Assembly: GCF_963853765.1 (NCBI RefSeq)
Contig: NC_088859.1
Span: 51,708,001-51,772,000, forward strand
DNA: 64,000 nt
Reading direction: 5' to 3'
Source of the DNA: Magallana gigas
Lineage: Eukaryota
Part shown: positions 44,328 to 56,600 of the stretch, one piece after another
How positions within the stretch are numbered: the first letter of the stretch is position 1
Layout of the letters: every line of letters begins with the position of its first letter
Translations under genes and position numbers: made by a program
The notes under the pieces: model-generated
The model's database searches: none
Told to the model about the DNA's origin: nothing
What the model saw: the letters and a program-made list of their open reading frames with translations, nothing else

Positions 44328-46136
44328 TTAGCCGTTATCAAAAGAGGAGAGACGGAGTCTGTTATCGTCGTCAGATAATATTTCGTGAGTAGACAAAGTC
44401 CAACAATTTCTGTCTTGTTCAGTGACCACTTGGTTTACATGTGGGTCATTTCTGTAATTTAATATCAAAGAATCTAATTTTGTAGCATCTTTAATTTCAA
44501 GCGCCGAGTATAAATCTTGTGGAATGTTCTGTACTGGTTCGATAGAGTTCCTAGGGCAATCCAAACACAGTCTGGGACGGTGAGTCTCTTGTACCGGTTC
44601 CTTGGAAATAATACTATATTCCACTGAATCATCGGACTGTTCCGAAGACGAAGCGGACGGAAACTGTCCCCCCAGCACTGACCACGAGTTATACGGACTT
44701 GGTTCTAATACAACACCGTCGACATTGTGGGGTTGGTTACCAACTTTGTCAACCATATATGGTTCCACCTTCACTGAAGTCTCTTCGGAGTCTCGAGTCT
44801 CTGTTAATCCTAGAGATTCAAGAGATGGGATCAACAAAGATGGTGCATCAGCTAAATCTTCGTGTTGTTCATCGAGGACTGTTTTGACCTCCGTTTCTGA
44901 GCCCAACTTTTTAAGGAAAGATCTATATTCCATTATCGAGTCAATCTCCTTGAAGTTTCCAGACTGTGCTATAGCTTCTGCCCTATCAATTTCCGTGTTA
45001 GCATCATCAAACATTCTTCTGAGCTGTTTTATCCTGGCCTTAGCAATGTAGTACATCATTTCTCGTCTTGCTTCGATGTCTTTAAGATCGATCTCGTTCA
45101 TATACTTTTCTGCCCTGTCCACGTCCTCTTCGCAAATAACGCAACCCGGAATACAACGACCCTTGTTACTTAATCCCACCAGACAAAATATCATCCTTAG
45201 GAGAAACATCCTCTTCCACAGATTCCTGATTTCTTCCTCCTCCTCGCTAAGTGCCCACAGTCCTTTGCTGCCTTCGTAAAGAAGCGATTCCTTCAATTCC
45301 GTCGTAGGCGTCTGTTCGAACTGCCACAGCTTGAAGTACACGTCAATGTAGATCATGTTTGCTATCTCTAGACACGGCCCGGTGAAGTTCGCGCAACAAT
45401 GGGCCTGTTTAACCATGTCTTCCCCTTCTGAAAACTTCTTAGCAATAGCCAAAGCATTAGCTTTTCTCCCGAAGAAAACGACTTCAGATATTGAGGCGTC
45501 TGTCGAGTTTACAGCAAGCGATTTTAGTTCTGTGAAAATGTCTTGATCAGGTAATGTTACATCATAAGTAATAGCAATTGCGTCAATTTCTGCTCCCAGT
45601 AAAGCAATATATTTGTCTGAGAGAAACTGCCGTTTAGATTCTGCTCTCTCGTGTTGAATCTGGTTTTGCAAAAGACGAGCCTGTTTCCGGAAAAAACTCC
45701 GTGGATCTTTAAACTGAGCATTATGAACTAAACGTTTGAGATTCTTAAAATACAAATGTATCGACTTTTTATTGATGGGAACCGACCGTTTTACAGTGAC
45801 CAGCGACTGAGAATGTGATTCTGCGTATAAAAAATGCATATAAAGACTCCTGGCCAGTTCCTGATAGCCGTGGTCAAAGAAACGTCTACAAAGATCGTCT
45901 GATGACACGAAACTGTAGTCCCTGAAGACCAGGGTCCGAAATAGTTCTCCCCACGTGATATCACCCACATCCAATCGTCTATCCAGGCACCCCGTAATCT
46001 GCAACGCTAAAGCAACTGTCCTGGTGTCAGTGTGTTTCAAGAATTCCCTCAAAGCTTCAAGATCCTGTTTCCTGGGCATGCGCGGTCGGCATCGTTGTGA
46101 GATAGATATGATAGGAGTCGGAGGAATAGGATCCAT
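44328..46136 (-). CDS. Uncharacterised 602-aa intronless protein: putative death-fold N-terminus, TPR-like helical core, acidic disordered tail with PVQET motif
   Basis: 1809-nt uninterrupted ORF with elevated GC in an otherwise stop-rich AT background and globular-protein-like composition. No transposase or RT motifs. Domain calls are pattern inference only. Confidence 0.85.
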   Translation of the reverse strand: MDPIPPTPIISISQRCRPRMPRKQDLEALREFLKHTDTRTVALALQITGCLDRRLDVGDITWGELFRTLVFRDYSFVSSDDLCRRFFDHGYQELARSLYMHFLYAESHSQSLVTVKRSVPINKKSIHLYFKNLKRLVHNAQFKDPRSFFRKQARLLQNQIQHERAESKRQFLSDKYIALLGAEIDAIAITYDVTLPDQDIFTELKSLAVNSTDASISEVVFFGRKANALAIAKKFSEGEDMVKQAHCCANFTGPCLEIANMIYIDVYFKLWQFEQTPTTELKESLLYEGSKGLWALSEEEEEIRNLWKRMFLLRMIFCLVGLSNKGRCIPGCVICEEDVDRAEKYMNEIDLKDIEARREMMYYIAKARIKQLRRMFDDANTEIDRAEAIAQSGNFKEIDSIMEYRSFLKKLGSETEVKTVLDEQHEDLADAPSLLIPSLESLGLTETRDSEETSVKVEPYMVDKVGNQPHNVDGVVLEPSPYNSWSVLGGQFPSASSSEQSDDSVEYSIISKEPVQETHRPRLCLDCPRNSIEPVQNIPQDLYSALEIKDATKLDSLILNYRNDPHVNQVVTEQDRNCWTLSTHEILSDDDNRLRLSSFDNG

Positions 46137-47769
46137 CGTGGAAAGTATTTAAATAATTGTCTGTATTTTAGACCAACCAAGAGTCTAATCAGACGTTGTT
46201 TTAAGTTACATCTGGAATAAAACGTATAGACCAAAAAGTCATTTTAATACTCTGATTCTCAGGTGCACTAAAACATTTAAATTTTACCGTATTTTAATGA
46301 ATGGATAAATAACAGGTTTAATTTTAATTTAATGACAAAGAATTAACACAAAGATAATCAATTGATTTATGATTGTTTTATTTACTTGGACGTTACTTGG
46401 ACGTTTTGTTTCCCCCTTATCATCGGGGGTTGTTTATTCAACATTTTCAACTTATAATTTAATACCCAAATAATTCGTATGTTCATTGATAGATAATATT
46501 ACGTTTAAGATGGAAATACCCACAGGGGTACCTTACCTTTCTCCCCTCCCTTCTTGTTATTCTCACAAGTCTTAATTGATGAAATGGACGATGAAAATCT
46601 TATGGAAAAAATCCCGGAAATTTACAGTAGCTATACATGTATTCTATTTATAGGTGCAAATCATGTGTTAGTTTCGGTTTATGAGAAGGAGTTACAATGT
46701 AATACTAGATCGGTATTTAAAATACCAAATCTCTCCTTTGTTGGGGGAAATTCAATGACTGAATAAAGGTTTTAAAAAGATATATGGATATATAGATTTA
46801 AAATTCAAATTCCAAATATTTCCAAATAACCTACATATTTATCGATCCGTACGGCACGTGTAAAAATCTATCATCTATGAAAAGCCATTACCTGCTATTC
46901 AAAGGTATCAATAACGGACACGTTTCATATCCTACAGCGGACAAAAGTGAAAACATTAAATAGGTAACATAAACTTAACAATACCACAAAATAATGAACA
47001 TAACTGTAGCGTGATATATCGACACAAAATATTCCGTTGATCGAAATTCAATCTGTATGGAAGCAGGCAGTTCAATCGCAAAGCAAACCTACAGACGACA
47101 TATTCTTGATGTAATCCCGATACCCATAGTCAATTTGACATCATTCTAGAGAGGAGGTCAAAAGCTTGTTTATTTCCGTTTGGGGGAGACTGTAGGCATT
47201 CTCAATATATTTTATTATTCAAAAATGGACAAAACTCCGAAATTTCTTCATATTTTATTGAAAATGACAGTTTAAAACATGATTTTTCATTGTGTGTACC
47301 AAACATTTAAGCCCCGCTACACCATATCAAACAAAGCTATTGTTATGAGGCATCATTGAAAGGAATTATATCTTAAATTTCATGAACCTGTAGGCACCTT
47401 TTATTTACTAGATCTTACATATGGTAATGGCCGTCCCCTCCCCTACCTGTAATGGACGTCCCCTCCCCTACCTGAAATCTTGCAACAAGGACTATAAAAT
47501 TATTATGTTGAAAAACTTTAGAATAATAAAAATGCCTCACTGGATATTCAAAAGGTGCAATAATCATATGATAGGTAATGATTTCCCATTAATTTCTTCA
47601 CTGTCAAGATAGCTTTTTGTCTATATGTTTTTATATCCAAACAACCCTCCCCAATGCCTAAGCACCAAACAGAAACCCTCCCCGGGGCATCTAAATAGGA
47701 AAACAAACAGTAGACTACCTTATTGTCTCACTTCAACTGCATTCATTCTTATGTCCGCATATCTTAAAA

Positions 47770-48115
47770 GAACAGATAACACATCCCCACATCCCACCCC
47801 GCCCTCCCCAACACAGACACAAGACTAAACTATCGCCTATCTTAAATAATAACACATTTCCCCACCCCGCCCTCCCCAACACAGACACAAGACTAAACTA
47901 TCGCCTATCTTAATAACACATTTCCCCACCCCGCCCTCCCCAACACAGACACTTGACAAGACTTAACTATCGCCTATCTTAATAACACATCCCCCCATCC
48001 CAACACAGACACAAGGCTAAACTATCGCCTATCTTAATAACACATTTCCCCACCCCACCCCACCCTTCCTATTGCAGACACTAGACTGAACTATTGCCTA
48101 TCTTAATAACACATT
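47770..48115. repeat. ~60-bp minisatellite, 5-6 copies (aataacacatttccccaccccgccctccccaacacagacacaagactaaactatcgcctatctt)
   Basis: Direct tandem copies. Confidence 0.9.
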
Positions 48116-48969
48116 AGATCCATAAGAATATCAAAAAATGTGTTTTATTAGTGTTTATATTAACATCTTTCTGTTAAACAATTATATTGAGTTAATCGTA
48201 AAGAGGATACAAAAGTTACTAAATTATTTGTATATGTACATCACGTAAGACAAATAGAAAGGACTGGCTTGGAAATGGTTTTCCATGCCATACTAGGTAA
48301 TCTGTCATTAGGAATTTACATTGTAAAGTACGGAAAGTTTTGGAGATAATGCCAGAATGTGTGTTATATTTAGGGAGATAATGCCAGAATGTATGTTATA
48401 TTTAGGTTGGGATTTATATCCTTATACACCTGGGGCCCGTTTCTCAAAAAGGCGTAAATCTGGGCTTAAGTTAGTCCGACTAACAAAGTTACGCCAATAT
48501 TTAGTCGGGTCTAAGTTGCGTTTCTGAAAGAGTATTTTGTTTTGCTTTGAGGCTATGATTATATGTGGTGGATCAATTTTCCAATTCATAGTACATGCAG
48601 TACCCGAAAGTACGCATGTTATACATGTACTTTACCACTGAATGTGCATAGTTCAAGCTTTTCATGACATTTTATATTAATAAAAGTAGAACAAATGCCT
48701 ATACACTTGTTAACATAATGAAATTTTAGAGAAAAACAGATGATATGAAAGCGGCATATATAATAGGTTTTAGAAACCAAATATGTGACAATTAAATGCA
48801 TTGTAGATGATATTGAGGCACAATCTTACATATAGATTGAACGAAACAATACATAGAAATTAACTCCAATGTTCGTGTAAACTTCAAATATTTTTAGAAT
48901 ACATGCAGAATGAGAAGTATGCTTCATAGACACTGTAGGTCTTTAGACATTTTCAGATGCTGGGATAAG

Positions 48970-53636: not shown

Positions 53637-53695
53637 TCATTCTACGAGAGCTCTGTTCGTAGCGTCACGTATACTCTTCAAAAATGGAACGAGAC
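53637..53695 (-). CDS. IDO: IDO last coding exon 14 ([19 protein letters not shown])
   Basis: ctttcattttAG acceptor; matches LMNFLKTVR; TGA at 53637-39. Confidence 0.9.
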
Positions 53696-56600
53696 CTAAA
53701 ATGAAAGGTGAGACATTGATTGTAATGATCATGGGAAGAGAATATGGAGAAGTCCATTTTACAAGAGAATATGGAGATGTCCTTTGTACAAGAGAATATG
53801 GAGAAGTCCATTTTACAAGAGAATGTGGACAAGTTCATTTTACAAGAGAATTTGGAGAAGTCCATTTTACAAGAGAATATGGAGATGTCCCTTGTACAAG
53901 AGAATATGGAGAAGTCCATTTTACAAGAGAATATGGACAAGTTCATTTTACAAGAGAATATGAAGATATCCATATACAAGAGAATATGGAGAAGTCCATT
54001 TTACAAGAGAATATGGAGATGTCCATTTTACAAGAGAATATGAAGTGCATTTTACGAGAGAATATGAAGAAGTCCATTTTACAAGAAAATGTGGACGTGT
54101 CCATTTTACTAGAGAATGTAAACAAACTGTCCATTTTACAAGAGAATATGGAGATGTCCATTTTACAAGAGAATATAGAGAAGTCAATTTTTCAAGAGAA
54201 TATGGAGATGTCCATTTTACAAGAGAATATGAAGAAGTCCATTTTACAAGAGAATATGAAGAAGTCCATTTTACAAGAGAATATGAAGAAGTCCATTCTA
54301 CAAGAAAATGTGGACGTGTCCATTTTACTAGAGAATGTAAACAAAATGTCCATTTTACAAGAGAATATGGAGATGTCCATTTTACAAGAGAATATGGAGA
54401 TGTCCATTTCACAAGAGAATATGGAGAAGTCCATTTTACAAGAGAATAGGGAGATGTCCATTTTACAAGAGAATATGAAGATGTCCATTTTACAAGAAAA
54501 TTTGGACGTGTCCCTAAACCAGTACTTACTAGATCCACCAGTTCCCTTGTTAGACACGGACTCAAAGTCTCTGTTCCTCGCCTCGTTGTTGGACGTAATA
54601 ATTATATACCTGTAAATATTCATAAAATATCGTATCATGTACCTGTAATGTTTTGGTACCGTAATCATTAAGTGTATGCCATAAATGCATTGTTAAAATT
54701 AACTGAAATTTCAAAGCAAATGATCTGCTCTGCTTACTTTGTGACGATCTGTATGTGGTAGGAACGGAAGTCTATCAGTGACTGTACTGCCTCGTTATAG
54801 GAAGTCTTCACATCTTCACAGGCCTGGGCTAATCAATTGGACAACACAGTAATTAAATTTAATTTAATCCTTATTATATTTTGCTATTAATTATAGAAAA
54901 CGGTCATTTGACATAAAATTGACATTTTCATTGTTTTGCCTCAGATTGATTGTTTTAAACATGGCACGCGATTGCCGAATATATTTTTATGTCCGACTGG
55001 TGGGATTAATATCATGCAATATGGCCGAGGCTTTGCCTATCTATCTCGACATTTAATATTATTCAATACAGAAAACGTGTTTCGTATACGTCTTTGAATT
55101 AGGAGTGGTTGCCTTTTAAAATTACTTTAAAAATTGAGTTGTTGCCCTTAAAATGATGTTAAATTGTTGTTTTTGAAGCAGAATAAAATGGCAGCGTCGA
55201 TATTTGCTCAAACTTCTGCGGAGGAAAGAGAAAAAACGCTTAAAATTAAATAGCAACAAAACTTTGAAAATGAACAATAGTGCACCGAAGATTTTCAAAG
55301 AGTATATTTACATGTATTTGCGAAGATCTTTTTGTGAATAAGTATCTCACGTGATAGTCCTCGGGGGAAAATTCACTTATTTGGTTTGTTACAGACTGAC
55401 TACAGATGTATATCGGGTTGATCAATCTCATAGACGGCTCGCTTCGTCTTGTCGTCTATGAGATTGGTCAATCCGATATATTTTCGTAGTCAGTCTTCGA
55501 CCCGCCGTCTATGAGATTGATTAACCCGACAAATTTCCCGTAGTCAGTCAAACCTAATAAGTAATATTATATATTGTACAAAATTCAAAGAAACGTCATG
55601 CGGATTAATATGTTTTCTGTGACGTTGGCAACTGTTGTTATATATTTTTCCGCCAATCAGATTGCGCGTTAGAAACGGAATTAAGACCCAGAGTGCCTAA
55701 AAATATATATTACAAAGAGGGAATTTTGAACGAGTTTAGCAATCATAATCCGTGTCAGACTGAAATTCTGAAGTGATCATTAATTGAAAATACAACTTTT
55801 AAGTTAATTACTTGAGGTTATGAGGTGACCTTACCATACTGCCTTAGACTGGTCTCCCGGGAAATCAGCTCGATAAACGCGGCGTGTTTGGGAGGCATGT
55901 ACGACCGCATTTTGTTTAAAAAGTCTTCTATGTCTAAAATACAAAACAGAACCAATACACCACAAGAATTAATGTTTCGAACAAGTCCACCATTGAGTTA
56001 CTTAGAGTGAGTCTTGGGGAGTACCTTGATCGTGTTTGACCCCTAGTGCAGCATCCATCAACTGCATCGTGCTGCTCTGTGCCGCGCTTCCTCCGATCAT
56101 CTGTAACCATGGCAACATGAATCTTTATTTCACACAAAATAATACTATTGTGTTGTCTTTTAATATGTTTGGACACTGATGTATACACACCTTTTGAGGT
56201 TTCTCCGATACTCCTTCGTAAATTAGTCCTTCCGGTAATGAAGATCCATTCCCGCCCCATCTTCAAATATTGGATCCGGAAATTATTTAAAAAAAGGAAT
56301 ATATTAACAAGAGGCCCATGGGCCATATAGCTCACCTGAGGAACGATAGGTATGATAATATCGGCTAAATGGAACATAATACAAACTATCTGGACAATGT
56401 TGTGTAATGCATGTAGATCCTGGATAAATAAAAATCCCATTGCTTCTCAAAAAGATCCTTAACAATTTTTATGTATATATGGGATACAAACCTACATCAA
56501 ACTCTGACGCTCAAGAATTGTCCACGCGGGCCTTAGTCTACACAATTTAAAAGAATCACCCGGCTGATAAGTTTCTGAGAAGAATATTTTCAAAGATTTA

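What the first reader, a model, noticed from the sequence alone, without database searches (positions are those of the whole stretch)
44328..46136. Orphan intronless 602-aa protein built like an innate-immune adaptor: death-fold-like head, TPR-like core, tail with an exact PVQET TRAF motif
Seen: an intact 602-aa ORF. Residues ~20-105 form short amphipathic helices (LEALREFL...WGELFRTL...GYQELARSL) and residues ~170-410 are helical with TPR-like signatures (YYIAKARIKQLRRMFDDANTEIDRAEAIA). The last ~190 aa are acidic, Ser/Pro-rich and probably disordered, with PVQET at aa 514-518 (nt 44583-44597), a second PVQN at aa 534, and a CxxC between them. Established: PVQET is the P-x-Q-x-T TRAF2/3/5 docking site of mammalian CD40 and MAVS. 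Inference: a death-fold + helical scaffold + TRAF-recruiting protein of a family I cannot name, potentially an undescribed invertebrate signalling adaptor. This is my best candidate for a novel system in the window. The death-fold and TPR calls are by eye.
Basis: partly seen in the sequence, partly recalled or inferred. Interest (0 to 1): 0.75.

Follow-up and report, generated by a model that had tools for sequence, protein, structure and literature searches.

The report
Oyster CARD–TPR adaptor-like gene
The 602-aa ORF is a real, transcribed oyster gene of an undescribed mollusc-wide family that joins a divergent CARD death-fold head to a strongly conserved TPR body, but its PVQET "TRAF motif" occurs only in oysters and nothing here shows that it binds TRAF.

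Summary

- **Head:** aa ~20-110 is a death fold, CARD by sequence. Family N-terminal profiles hit only CARDs in the PDB (RIG-I 2e-8, Apaf-1 6.5e-6). Structure search returns almost only PYD/DD/CARD/DED entries.
- **Core:** aa 122-410 is a TPR solenoid (Z 19.4).
- **Tail:** acidic, Ser-rich and poorly modelled.

- **"Orphan":** at least 280 cluster representatives exist, and all named ones are bivalves or gastropods. The same genome holds about 9 paralogues. Microsynteny (IDO - gene - galactosyltransferase) is shared with Ostrea edulis.
- **"Intronless":** only the CDS is. A contig shows a 325-nt GT..AG intron in the 5'UTR, which also shows the gene is transcribed.

Selection differs by part (dN/dS): core 0.05, tail 0.25, head 0.68.

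[PA]VQE[TS] is conserved only within oysters, and TRAF-type motifs are not enriched in family tails. The recurrent tail feature is instead a C-terminal [DE][LM]FG[D] or SSFD motif.

Some relatives, one in this genome, end in a transmembrane anchor (MAVS-like topology).

Most likely reading: a cytosolic CARD-TPR adaptor or scaffold. TRAF recruitment remains unproven.

The parts
46537..46611 (-). Exon 1 (5'UTR). At least 75 nt were seen; the true transcription start was not determined.
   Evidence: The X1 contig has 75 letters upstream of the joint 46211->46537. The donor reads AAAG|GTAAGG at 46537|46536.
46212..46536 (-). 325-nt intron in the 5'UTR, GT..AG on the gene's strand
   Evidence: the joint skips 325 nt, with ends CT..AC on the + strand, which is GT..AG on the - strand. 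The acceptor reads ttattccag|A at 46212|46211.
43903..46211 (-). Exon 2: 75 nt of 5'UTR, the whole CDS and at least 425 nt of 3'UTR
   Evidence: X1 contig piece 43903-46211, depth 14.8, 1 mismatch. An AATAAA lies just upstream of 43903 on the - strand. Contig L009 runs colinear on to 43555.
44328..46136 (-). CDS, 602 aa plus stop. Met20 aligns with the start Met of most relatives.
   Evidence: Alignment A6 places the family's start Met at the window protein's M20.
45807..46079 (-). Divergent CARD (death fold), aa ~20-110. Helices at 23-34, 38-48, 62-74, 79-88 and 92-109; helix 3 is reduced to one turn (aa 57-59).
   Evidence: AF2 model pLDDT 85.8. VIA top hits are PYD/DD/CARD/DED, Z up to 8.4. 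Family profiles A3 and A6 hit PDB CARDs: RIG-I 2e-8, Apaf-1 6.5e-6. Relatives hit Pfam CARD/CARD_2.
44907..45773 (-). TPR-type alpha-solenoid core, aa 122-410, 13 helices. This is the most conserved part.
   Evidence: AF2 model. VIA Z 19.4 to APPBP2, then Rap, LGN, PlcR, APC subunits and MalT-III. There are 74 invariant columns across 8 bivalve sequences. dN/dS is 0.05.
44331..44906 (-). Acidic, Ser-rich, probably disordered tail, aa 411-602
   Evidence: Composition. pLDDT 30-32 for aa 495-545. 37-39% identity to Ostrea-type orthologues against 82% in the core. dN/dS is 0.25.
44652..44702 (-). Best-conserved tail island in oysters, Y-N-S-W-S-V-L-G-G-Q-F-P-S (aa ~479-495). It contains a W-x-x-L core.
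   Evidence: Alignment A4: Y, W, S, L, G, G, Q and F are invariant in 5 Ostreidae sequences.
44583..44597 (-). PVQET (aa 514-518), a TRAF2/3-type motif by pattern only
   Evidence: Position. Conserved as [PA]VQE[TS] in Crassostrea and Ostrea only. No enrichment across the family.
44337..44360 (-). C-terminal motif R-L-x-L-S-S-F-D (aa 593-600). It is the oyster form of the family's recurrent C-terminal acidic-Phe motif.
   Evidence: R, L, S, S and F are invariant in Ostreidae. [DE][LM]F[GE] occurs 14 times against 1.2+-1.1 expected, 9 of them within the last 11 residues. [SN]SF[DE] occurs 15 times against 2.5.

Best explanation
**What it is.** A genuine, expressed cellular gene (5'UTR exon, 325-nt intron, one coding exon). 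It encodes a cytosolic adaptor- or scaffold-type protein of an undescribed mollusc family, which I call CARD-TPR here.

**Shown**
1. The N-terminal ~90 aa are a divergent CARD with a shortened helix 3.
2. aa 122-410 are a TPR solenoid under very strong purifying selection.
3. The last 190 aa are a fast-evolving, probably disordered acidic tail with a few conserved short islands.
4. The gene sits in a bivalve-wide clade of close relatives, with conserved synteny shown for Ostrea. Paralogues carry the same CARD-TPR body. One relative with the TPR module carries a HEPN head. Some relatives have a C-terminal membrane anchor or an ectodomain plus a transmembrane segment.

**Inferred mechanism**
- The TPR body is the constant partner- or ligand-binding platform.
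- The CARD head couples it by homotypic death-fold assembly to other CARD proteins: RIG-I/MAVS-type CARDs, Apaf-1-like proteins or CARD caspases.
- The tail supplies short docking motifs.
- The family-wide motif is the extreme C-terminal acidic-Phe motif. PVQET is an oyster-specific addition that may or may not bind TRAF.
For: **Gene reality**
- A spliced GT..AG joint lies on the gene's strand in contig X1.
- dN/dS is 0.18 overall and 0.05 in the core.
- The order IDO - gene - Galactosyl_T is shared with Ostrea edulis.
- No transposon-type flanking repeats were found.

**CARD**
- Profile A3 (70 N-termini) hits only CARDs among natural PDB chains down to about E 0.05, at near full length: RIG-I 2e-8, Apaf-1 6.5e-6, caspase-9 3.6e-5, BCL10 and MAVS about 0.01.
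- The subfamily-only profile A6 gives RIG-I 2.7e-5 and Apaf-1 3.6e-5.
- Pfam CARD hits in relatives: 1.2e-10 and 4.5e-9, and 8 of 70 N-termini at E<0.01.
- Close relatives give sub-threshold CARD_2 hits, best 3.7e-5.
- The model has pLDDT 85.8, and VIA ranks mostly death-fold domains, Z 8.4 downward.

**TPR**
- VIA gives Z 19.4-12.4, and all 50 listed matches are TPR proteins.
- Foldseek, the Atlas and AFDB also return TPR proteins.
- Paralogues give weak Pfam TPR_MalT/TPR_2/TPR_12 hits.

**Family and modularity**
- 280 representatives at E<=1e-3.
- Every named member is a mollusc.
- 12 matches in this genome, and a supporting tree.
- HEPN_DZIP3 joined to this TPR module in a Mercenaria protein.
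- Tail-anchored members, one of them in this genome.

**C-terminal motif enrichment:**
Against: - The window protein itself has no Pfam or PDB sequence hit. The CARD call rests on family profiles and a predicted structure.
- Foldseek E-values for both models are not significant.
- Z 8.4 is within the range that helical bundles can reach by chance, according to the tool's own note.
- The head lacks about 15 residues relative to other bivalve relatives and evolves fast (dN/dS 0.68). It may have lost CARD-CARD competence.
- No binding partner, ligand, localisation or induction was tested.
- Three polyA RNA runs show almost no reads on the gene, at about 1% sampling.
- An immune or apoptotic role is inferred only from what CARD proteins generally do.
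Confidence: 0.6

Rival explanations
1. One reading: a TRAF-recruiting innate-immune adaptor. PVQET in the tail would dock the TRAF-C (MATH) domain of oyster TRAF2/3-like proteins, in a MAVS/CD40-like way, and drive NF-kB/IRF signalling.
For: - PVQET fits both PxQx[TS] and the (P/S/A/T)x(Q/E)E TRAF2 consensus (established knowledge).
- PxQE[TS] arises in only 1.1% of tail shuffles.
- [PA]VQE[TS] is kept between Crassostrea and Ostrea, although the tails are only 37-39% identical.
- The genome encodes at least 4 TRAF3-like MATH exons, E 1e-89 to 1e-93 to human TRAF3.
- The head is a CARD whose close relatives lean towards the RIG-I/MAVS-type Pfam model CARD_2.
Against: - The motif is absent from Pinctada, Mytilus, Mya and Dreissena relatives.
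- The Pro is replaced by Ala in one Ostrea-type sequence.
- Across 82 family tails, PxQx[TS] occurs 11 times against 7.2+-2.7 expected, and [PSAT]x[QE]E 55 times against 55.6.
- Other tail islands and the C-terminal motif are better conserved.
- The second site, PVQN, does not fit the consensus.
- No binding evidence of any kind was obtained.
Confidence: 0.12
2. A TPR scaffold whose CARD-like head is vestigial or regulatory. The protein would work through its conserved TPR groove, for example as a substrate receptor, a co-chaperone-like peptide clamp, or an autoinhibited scaffold binding its own acidic C-terminus. It would not act as a death-fold signalling adaptor, and might act as a decoy that damps CARD signalling.
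For: - The core has dN/dS 0.05 against 0.68 for the head.
- The oyster head is shortened around helices 1 and 3.
- The best structural match is the CRL2 substrate receptor APPBP2 (Z 19.4).
- aa ~235-410 superpose on EEVD-clamp TPRs (FKBP38, Sti1, CHIP, Cpr7) at rmsd 2.0-2.8 A, Z 13-14.
- A conserved acidic C-terminal [DE][LM]FG[D] motif recurs in the family.
Against: - The CARD is retained at the N-terminus across most of the 104 family members whose N-terminal region aligns to the profile and still models confidently (pLDDT 85.8).
- Swapping the head for a HEPN domain, and adding membrane anchors, looks like effector/adaptor modularity rather than a housekeeping scaffold.
- Matches among TPR proteins are generic.
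Confidence: 0.22
3. Not a host gene: a transposon-borne or viral accessory ORF, or a chance ORF.
For: The CDS lies in a single exon in an AT-rich intergenic setting, with satellite repeats on both sides.
Against: - Conserved microsynteny with Ostrea edulis.
- Purifying selection.
- A spliced 5'UTR.
- No terminal repeats.
- A placement among bivalve relatives broadly in line with species relationships; some deeper forks are weakly supported.
Confidence: 0.01

Closest known systems
MAVS, including oyster CgMAVS (PMC5557890)
   Same: - N-terminal CARD.
- A long, poorly structured region carrying a TRAF-type motif.
- Some family members, though not this one, end in a C-terminal transmembrane tail anchor.
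- Close relatives' heads give sub-threshold hits to the RIG-I/MAVS-type Pfam model CARD_2.
   Different: - The window protein has no transmembrane segment.
- A 290-aa TPR solenoid sits between the CARD and the tail.
- CgMAVS is CARD + Death domain + TM, and was reported to bind TRAF6 but not TRAF2 or TRAF3 (PMC5557890).
- There is no detectable sequence relationship outside the CARD.
Apaf-1 / CED-4 and NLR-type STAND sensors (CARD + NTPase + repeat sensor, e.g. NACHT-TPR proteins of bivalves and cnidarians, PMC9646362)
   Same: - A death-fold head followed by a repeat solenoid.
- Family CARD profiles hit the Apaf-1 CARD at 6.5e-6 and 3.6e-5.
- MalT domain III, a STAND sensor TPR, is among the structural matches.
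   Different: There is no NB-ARC or NACHT NTPase. Only about 12-17 low-confidence residues link the CARD and the TPR. Any oligomerisation switch must therefore work differently.
BCL10 and CARD9/10/11/14 adaptors
   Same: - A CARD head plus a non-catalytic body and a Ser-rich tail.
- BCL10 CARD is hit at E about 0.009 by the family profile.
   Different: The body here is a TPR solenoid, not a coiled coil or a Ser/Thr-rich tail alone. There is no sequence similarity outside the CARD.
RRNPP-type receptors (Rap, NprR, PlcR, AimR) and other 'effector head + TPR sensor' proteins
   Same: - The layout is a small N-terminal output domain followed by a TPR body of about 250-300 aa.
- These receptors are among the top structural matches: Rap Z 17.7, PlcR 17.1, NprR 15.3.
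   Different: - These are bacterial or phage proteins with HTH or phosphatase heads.
- Sequence identity is only 5-12%.
- The resemblance is of fold and layout only.
CD40 / TNFR-family TRAF-interacting motifs
   Same: The pentapeptide PVQET matches the PxQxT TRAF2/3/5 docking pattern (established knowledge).
   Different: Here it lies in a cytosolic CARD-TPR protein, it is conserved only in oysters, and nothing shows that it binds TRAF.

Membership tests
CARD (death-fold superfamily; Pfam PF00619 / PF16739) | Compact antiparallel six-helix bundle of about 90 aa | tested here: met
   - The AF2 model has pLDDT 85.8, with five helices plus a one-turn helix 3.
- VIA-wide top 50 are almost all PYD/DD/CARD/DED, Z 8.4-5.0, with 76-91 residues aligned.
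- The Foldseek top hits are also death folds, but their E-values are not significant.
CARD (death-fold superfamily; Pfam PF00619 / PF16739) | Sequence match to a CARD profile | tested here: inconclusive
   - The window protein alone has no Pfam or PDB hit.
- At family level the feature is met.
  - Profiles A3 and A6, which include the window protein, hit PDB CARDs at 2e-8 to 1e-5.
  - Relatives pass Pfam CARD at 1.2e-10 and 4.5e-9.
CARD (death-fold superfamily; Pfam PF00619 / PF16739) | Homotypic CARD-CARD binding or filament formation | not testable with these tools
   This needs Y2H, co-IP or EM. Helix 3 is shortened in oysters, and the head evolves fast (dN/dS 0.68).
TPR superhelix (Pfam clan CL0020) | Tandem helix-turn-helix repeats forming a right-handed solenoid | tested here: met
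   13 helices span aa 123-409. VIA gives Z 19.4-12.4 to 50 TPR proteins.
TPR superhelix (Pfam clan CL0020) | 34-residue TPR sequence consensus detectable by Pfam TPR models | tested here: not met
   The window protein has no TPR Pfam hit. Paralogues give only sub-threshold TPR_MalT, TPR_2 and TPR_12 hits.
TRAF-binding adaptors (TRAF-interacting motif) | Presence of PxQx[TS] or (P/S/A/T)x(Q/E)E in an accessible region | tested here: met
   PVQET at aa 514-518 lies in a low-confidence tail. The chance of PxQx[TS] in tail shuffles is 0.10.
TRAF-binding adaptors (TRAF-interacting motif) | Motif conserved in orthologues or enriched in the family | tested here: not met
   It is kept only in Ostreidae, with a variable Pro, and absent from other bivalve relatives. 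It is not enriched in 82 tails.
TRAF-binding adaptors (TRAF-interacting motif) | Physical binding to a TRAF-C / MATH domain | not testable with these tools
   The one complex prediction gave no verdict and counts neither for nor against. Biochemistry is needed.
MAVS | C-terminal transmembrane tail anchor | tested here: not met
   A hydropathy scan over 152 family representatives flags several relatives and the paralogue L020. The scan did not include the window protein itself. Its C-terminal sequence ends ...RLRLSSFDNG and shows no hydrophobic stretch.
MAVS | N-terminal RIG-I/MAVS-type CARD | tested here: inconclusive
   Close relatives give sub-threshold CARD_2 hits, best 3.7e-5, 24.1 bits against a cut-off of 28.2. 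The profiles hit RIG-I and Apaf-1 CARDs about equally.
Apaf-1/NLR STAND sensors | Central NB-ARC/NACHT P-loop NTPase | tested here: not met
   No NTPase domain was found by Pfam. The CARD and the TPR are joined by a short low-confidence linker, aa 103-120.

The most novel reading that the evidence does not exclude
CARD-TPR proteins may be a mollusc-specific class of NTPase-less death-fold adaptors or sensors. Their tail-anchored members (CARD-TPR-TM, found in Crassostrea, Haliotis and Patella) would act as MAVS-like membrane platforms. They could be the 'missing' RLR adaptor in gastropods, which are reported to lack MAVS (PMC11103948, PMC9334734). The window gene would be the soluble member, coupling a RIG-I/MAVS-type CARD through its TPR body and tail motifs (PVQET and the C-terminal acidic-Phe motif) to TRAF or other downstream effectors.
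Probability: 0.12. Interest if true: 0.8.

Novelty: new variant of a known kind. Interest (0 to 1): 0.5.

Why it matters
CARD adaptors organise apoptosis and antiviral or inflammatory signalling, and mollusc versions of these pathways are only partly mapped. Oyster MAVS is atypical, and abalone and Aplysia are reported to lack MAVS altogether.

The family described here has three features that make it a concrete target:
- It joins a CARD directly to a strongly conserved TPR body.
- Some variants are membrane-anchored and one relative has its head swapped for a HEPN domain.
- It is mollusc-wide and multi-copy, yet appears in databases only as 'uncharacterized' or, automatically, as 'CARD domain-containing protein'.

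These genes could be tested in work on OsHV-1 and Vibrio disease in farmed bivalves. The family also raises a general question: how can a death-fold adaptor be regulated without a STAND NTPase?

The specific TRAF claim that made the finding attractive is the weakest part.

Tried and rejected
- **Pfam and PDB sequence searches with the window protein alone.** Only sub-threshold noise came back (Cytochrom_B562 at E 0.0028, below the cut-off), and there were no PDB hits.
- **ESM Atlas feature search.** Scores were 0.87-0.88, to cohesin-loader/MAU2 and TPR clusters. These are below the trust level and serve only as a lead towards TPR.
- **Foldseek against the PDB, both models.** No E-value reached 1e-3, so VIA-align and sequence profiles carried the argument.
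- **Complex prediction.** An oyster TRAF3-like MATH domain (L013:1381-1893) was folded with tail aa 495-545. The result was no verdict, score 0.00, and the controls were not run. It is not evidence either way.
- **The search for homologous proteins with a profile of distant members (A5).** Only 4 hits came back (Patella, Lottia) because of the word index. It says nothing about non-mollusc relatives.
- **Raw polyA RNA runs X21-X23.** Almost no reads fell on the gene at about 1% sampling. This cannot show silence. Transcription rests on the spliced contig of X1, a run that is only guessed to be RNA.
- **Identity with CgMAVS.** Rejected, because CgMAVS is CARD + Death domain + TM (PMC5557890).
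- **Transposon or viral origin.** Rejected.
- **The CxxC (CLDC).** Not conserved in the 91%-identical congener, so it was dropped.
- **TRAF6-type PxExx[FYWDE].** It occurs 28 times against 14.8+-3.8 expected in family tails. I did not rely on this, because shuffling destroys acidic clustering and the window tail has no such site.
- **Literature searches for CARD-TPR or Death-TPR architectures.** Nothing was found.
- **Earlier scan notes.** None near this locus. One note elsewhere in the genome, on a CARD + TRADD-N-like protein, was not used.
Full report
**Observation.** The ORF at 44328-46136 (-) is intact: 602 aa, ATG start, and an in-frame stop five codons upstream.
- PVQET is at aa 514-518 (nt 44583-44597).
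- PVQN is at aa 534-537, and CLDC at aa 524-527.
- The quoted helical stretches are at aa 26-33, 62-69, 90-98 and 362-390.
- The last 192 residues are 18.8% acidic, 7.3% basic and 24.5% Ser+Pro+Thr. The stretch aa 495-545 folds with pLDDT about 30.

**It is a real host gene, and it is not an orphan.**
- A protein search found identical or 98-99% identical copies, and a 91% group from another Crassostrea. It also found annotated relatives in Ostrea edulis (62% identity) and in Pinctada, Dreissena, Mya and Mytilus (38-50% over about half of the protein).
- A profile of aa 1-410, run over 1.84 billion cluster representatives, found 280 proteins at E<=1e-3 and 117 at E<=1e-30.
- Every member that carries a source name is a mollusc.
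  - Bivalves: Magallana/Crassostrea, Ostrea, Pinctada, Mytilus, Dreissena, Mya, Mactra, Mercenaria, Sinanodonta.
  - Gastropods: Haliotis, Patella, Lottia.
- The window's own genome holds 12 matches, 9 of them long open frames on other chromosomes.
- In a tree, the window gene groups with Crassostrea sp., Ostrea and Pinctada, and then with other bivalves. The in-genome paralogues fall in other clades that have their own cross-species members.
- In Ostrea edulis the orthologue also has a single-exon CDS. It lies between an IDO gene and a galactosyltransferase gene. The same neighbours flank the window gene: the Galactosyl_T ORF at 36720-37826 (+), and IDO exons at 53637-56107 (-).
- No terminal or inverted repeats bracket the gene. 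Only satellites lie at 42196-43334 and 47799-48134.

**Transcription and gene structure.**
- A contig of run X1 covers 43903-46211 with one mismatch. It then jumps to 46537, skipping 325 nt whose ends read CT..AC on the + strand, which is GT..AG on the gene's strand.
- The genome reads AAAG|GTAAGG at the donor and ttattccag|A at the acceptor.
- The gene is therefore transcribed and spliced. Only the CDS is intronless.
- Three polyA raw-read runs, sampled at about 1%, put almost nothing on the gene. Expression in those samples is low or undetected. Induction could not be assessed.

**The head is a CARD.**
- The window protein alone hits nothing.
- A profile of 70 family N-termini hits CARDs at near full length in the PDB: RIG-I 2e-8, Apaf-1 6.5e-6, caspase-9 3.6e-5, and BCL10, MAVS, MDA5 and CED-4 at about 0.01.
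- A profile restricted to the window gene's own subfamily gives RIG-I 2.7e-5 and Apaf-1 3.6e-5.
- Relatives pass Pfam CARD outright, at 1.2e-10 and 4.5e-9, and 8 of 70 N-termini hit at E<0.01.
- A paralogue in this genome scores 0.011. Close relatives give sub-threshold, full-length CARD_2 hits, best 3.7e-5.
- With the 70-sequence alignment, AlphaFold models aa 1-112 at pLDDT 85.8.
- An exhaustive structural comparison ranks almost only PYD, DD, CARD and DED domains, Z 8.4-5.0 with 76-91 residues aligned. Foldseek ranks the same folds, but without significance.
- Oyster orthologues lack about 7 residues after helix 1 and about 8 around helix 3 relative to other bivalves. Helix 3 is therefore a single turn.
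- Met20 aligns with the start Met of most relatives.

**The core is a TPR solenoid.**
- The model of aa 1-410 (pLDDT 73.9; above 85 for most of aa 310-410) has 13 helices from aa 123 to 409.
- All 50 best structural matches are TPR proteins: APPBP2 Z 19.4, Rap 17.7, LGN, PlcR, BtubC, APC subunits and MalT domain III. Three-repeat EEVD-clamp domains match aa ~235-410 at rmsd 2.0-2.8 A.
- The Atlas and AFDB searches put an uncharacterised mollusc cluster first (TM 0.70 and E 4e-14). Generic TPR proteins follow.
- No Pfam TPR model reaches threshold.

**Selection.** Against the 91%-identical congener, dN/dS is 0.05 in the core, 0.25 in the tail and 0.68 in the head. Identity to Ostrea is 82% in the core, 59% in the head and 38% in the tail. 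The TPR body is the constrained part.

**The tail and the TRAF claim.**
- Within Ostreidae the tail keeps a few islands: S-L-E-S-L, Y-N-S-W-S-V-L-G-G-Q-F, [PA]VQE[TS], E-[PS]-V-Q-x, and R-L-x-x-S-S-F at the C-terminus.
- The Pro of PVQET is Ala in one Ostrea-type sequence. The CxxC is not conserved.
- Outside oysters the motif is absent.
- Across 82 family tails, PxQx[TS] occurs 11 times against 7.2+-2.7 in shuffles, and [PSAT]x[QE]E 55 times against 55.6.
- By contrast, [DE][LM]F[GE] occurs 14 times against 1.2+-1.1, nine of them within the last 11 residues. The oyster-type [SN]SF[DE] occurs 15 times against 2.5. These counts are not phylogenetically independent.
- The genome does encode TRAF3-like MATH domains.
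- The single complex prediction gave no verdict and is not used as evidence.

**Family architecture.**
- A Mercenaria protein that matches the core profile carries a HEPN_DZIP3 domain at its N-terminus.
- A Mytilus member has a Cys-rich N-terminal region and a transmembrane segment ahead of the CARD-like-TPR part.
- Seven of 152 representatives end in a hydrophobic tail anchor. Three are named: Crassostrea virginica, Haliotis rubra (Pfam CARD 4.5e-9) and Patella caerulea.
- This genome has such a paralogue on another chromosome (L020).
- Oyster MAVS is a different protein (CARD + Death domain + TM; PMC5557890). Abalone and Aplysia are reported to lack MAVS (PMC11103948, PMC9334734).
- I found no paper that names a CARD-TPR architecture. 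Some members are auto-labelled 'CARD domain-containing protein'.

**Verdict.** The death-fold and TPR calls made by eye are right, 'orphan' is wrong, and the TRAF claim is unproven and weakened. The most likely reading (0.6) is a cytosolic CARD-TPR adaptor or scaffold. In it, the conserved TPR body binds a partner, the CARD couples to other CARD proteins, and the tail adds short motifs.

The rivals are:
- a TPR scaffold with a vestigial or regulatory head (0.22);
- a non-host gene (0.01).

I class it as a new variant of a known kind, with moderate interest.

Noticed in passing
L020:1837-3174 (-) = G000:C6:36506500-36511500: A paralogue in the same genome has the CARD-like head and TPR body but ends in a hydrophobic C-terminal segment, a tail anchor. 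Tail-anchored relatives also exist in Crassostrea virginica (P0144), Haliotis rubra (P0152, Pfam CARD 4.5e-9) and Patella caerulea (P0156). This is a MAVS-like topology, found in taxa that include gastropods reported to lack MAVS.
   Followed up: partly
Family tails (P0046, P0047, P0048, P0052, P0054, P0059, P0063, P0064, P0069); window 44337-44360: A recurrent extreme C-terminal motif, [DE][LM]F[GE](D), occurs 14 times against 1.2 expected. In oysters it is replaced by S-S-F-D. It loosely recalls acidic C-terminal peptides that dock into TPR clamps, so it might bind the protein's own TPR groove. This was not tested.
   Followed up: partly
P0115 (Mytilus galloprovincialis) and P0170 (Mercenaria mercenaria): Both relatives match the family core profile but carry other N-terminal parts. 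P0115 has a Cys-rich ectodomain-like region and a transmembrane segment ahead of the CARD-like-TPR part. P0170 has a DZIP3-type HEPN domain ahead of the TPR module.
   Followed up: partly
window 42196-43584: Satellite-like tandem repeats with units of about 134-157 nt, plus a (CCGT)n microsatellite near 43500-43545. PolyA RNA reads lie on them at high depth, but only at 95-99% identity and with many loose ends at 43584. This points to a dispersed, transcribed repeat family rather than the 3'UTR of the gene.
   Followed up: no
window 47799-48134: Five tandem copies of a C-rich unit of about 68-75 nt lie roughly 1.2 kb upstream of exon 1.
   Followed up: no
window 36720-37826 (+) and 53637-56107 (-): The neighbours are a single-ORF galactosyltransferase (Pfam Galactosyl_T, 4.5e-41; 83% identical to the Ostrea edulis neighbour) and exons of an indoleamine 2,3-dioxygenase gene. 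The gene order is conserved with Ostrea edulis. The ORFs listed at 53701-54615 (+) and 53948-54668 overlap the IDO exons and are probably not genes.
   Followed up: partly
L010-L013 (G000:C6, four loci): Four TRAF3-like TRAF-C/MATH domains, each encoded in one exon. The two that were checked score E 1e-89 to 1e-93 to human TRAF3. Two lie about 41 kb apart (56.60 and 56.64 Mb).
   Followed up: partly
window 46079-46136 (-), aa 1-19: Most relatives start at the Met that aligns with the window protein's Met20. The 19-aa N-terminal extension is shared by Crassostrea and Ostrea, but it may be an oyster-specific addition, or Met20 may be the start that is actually used.
   Followed up: no
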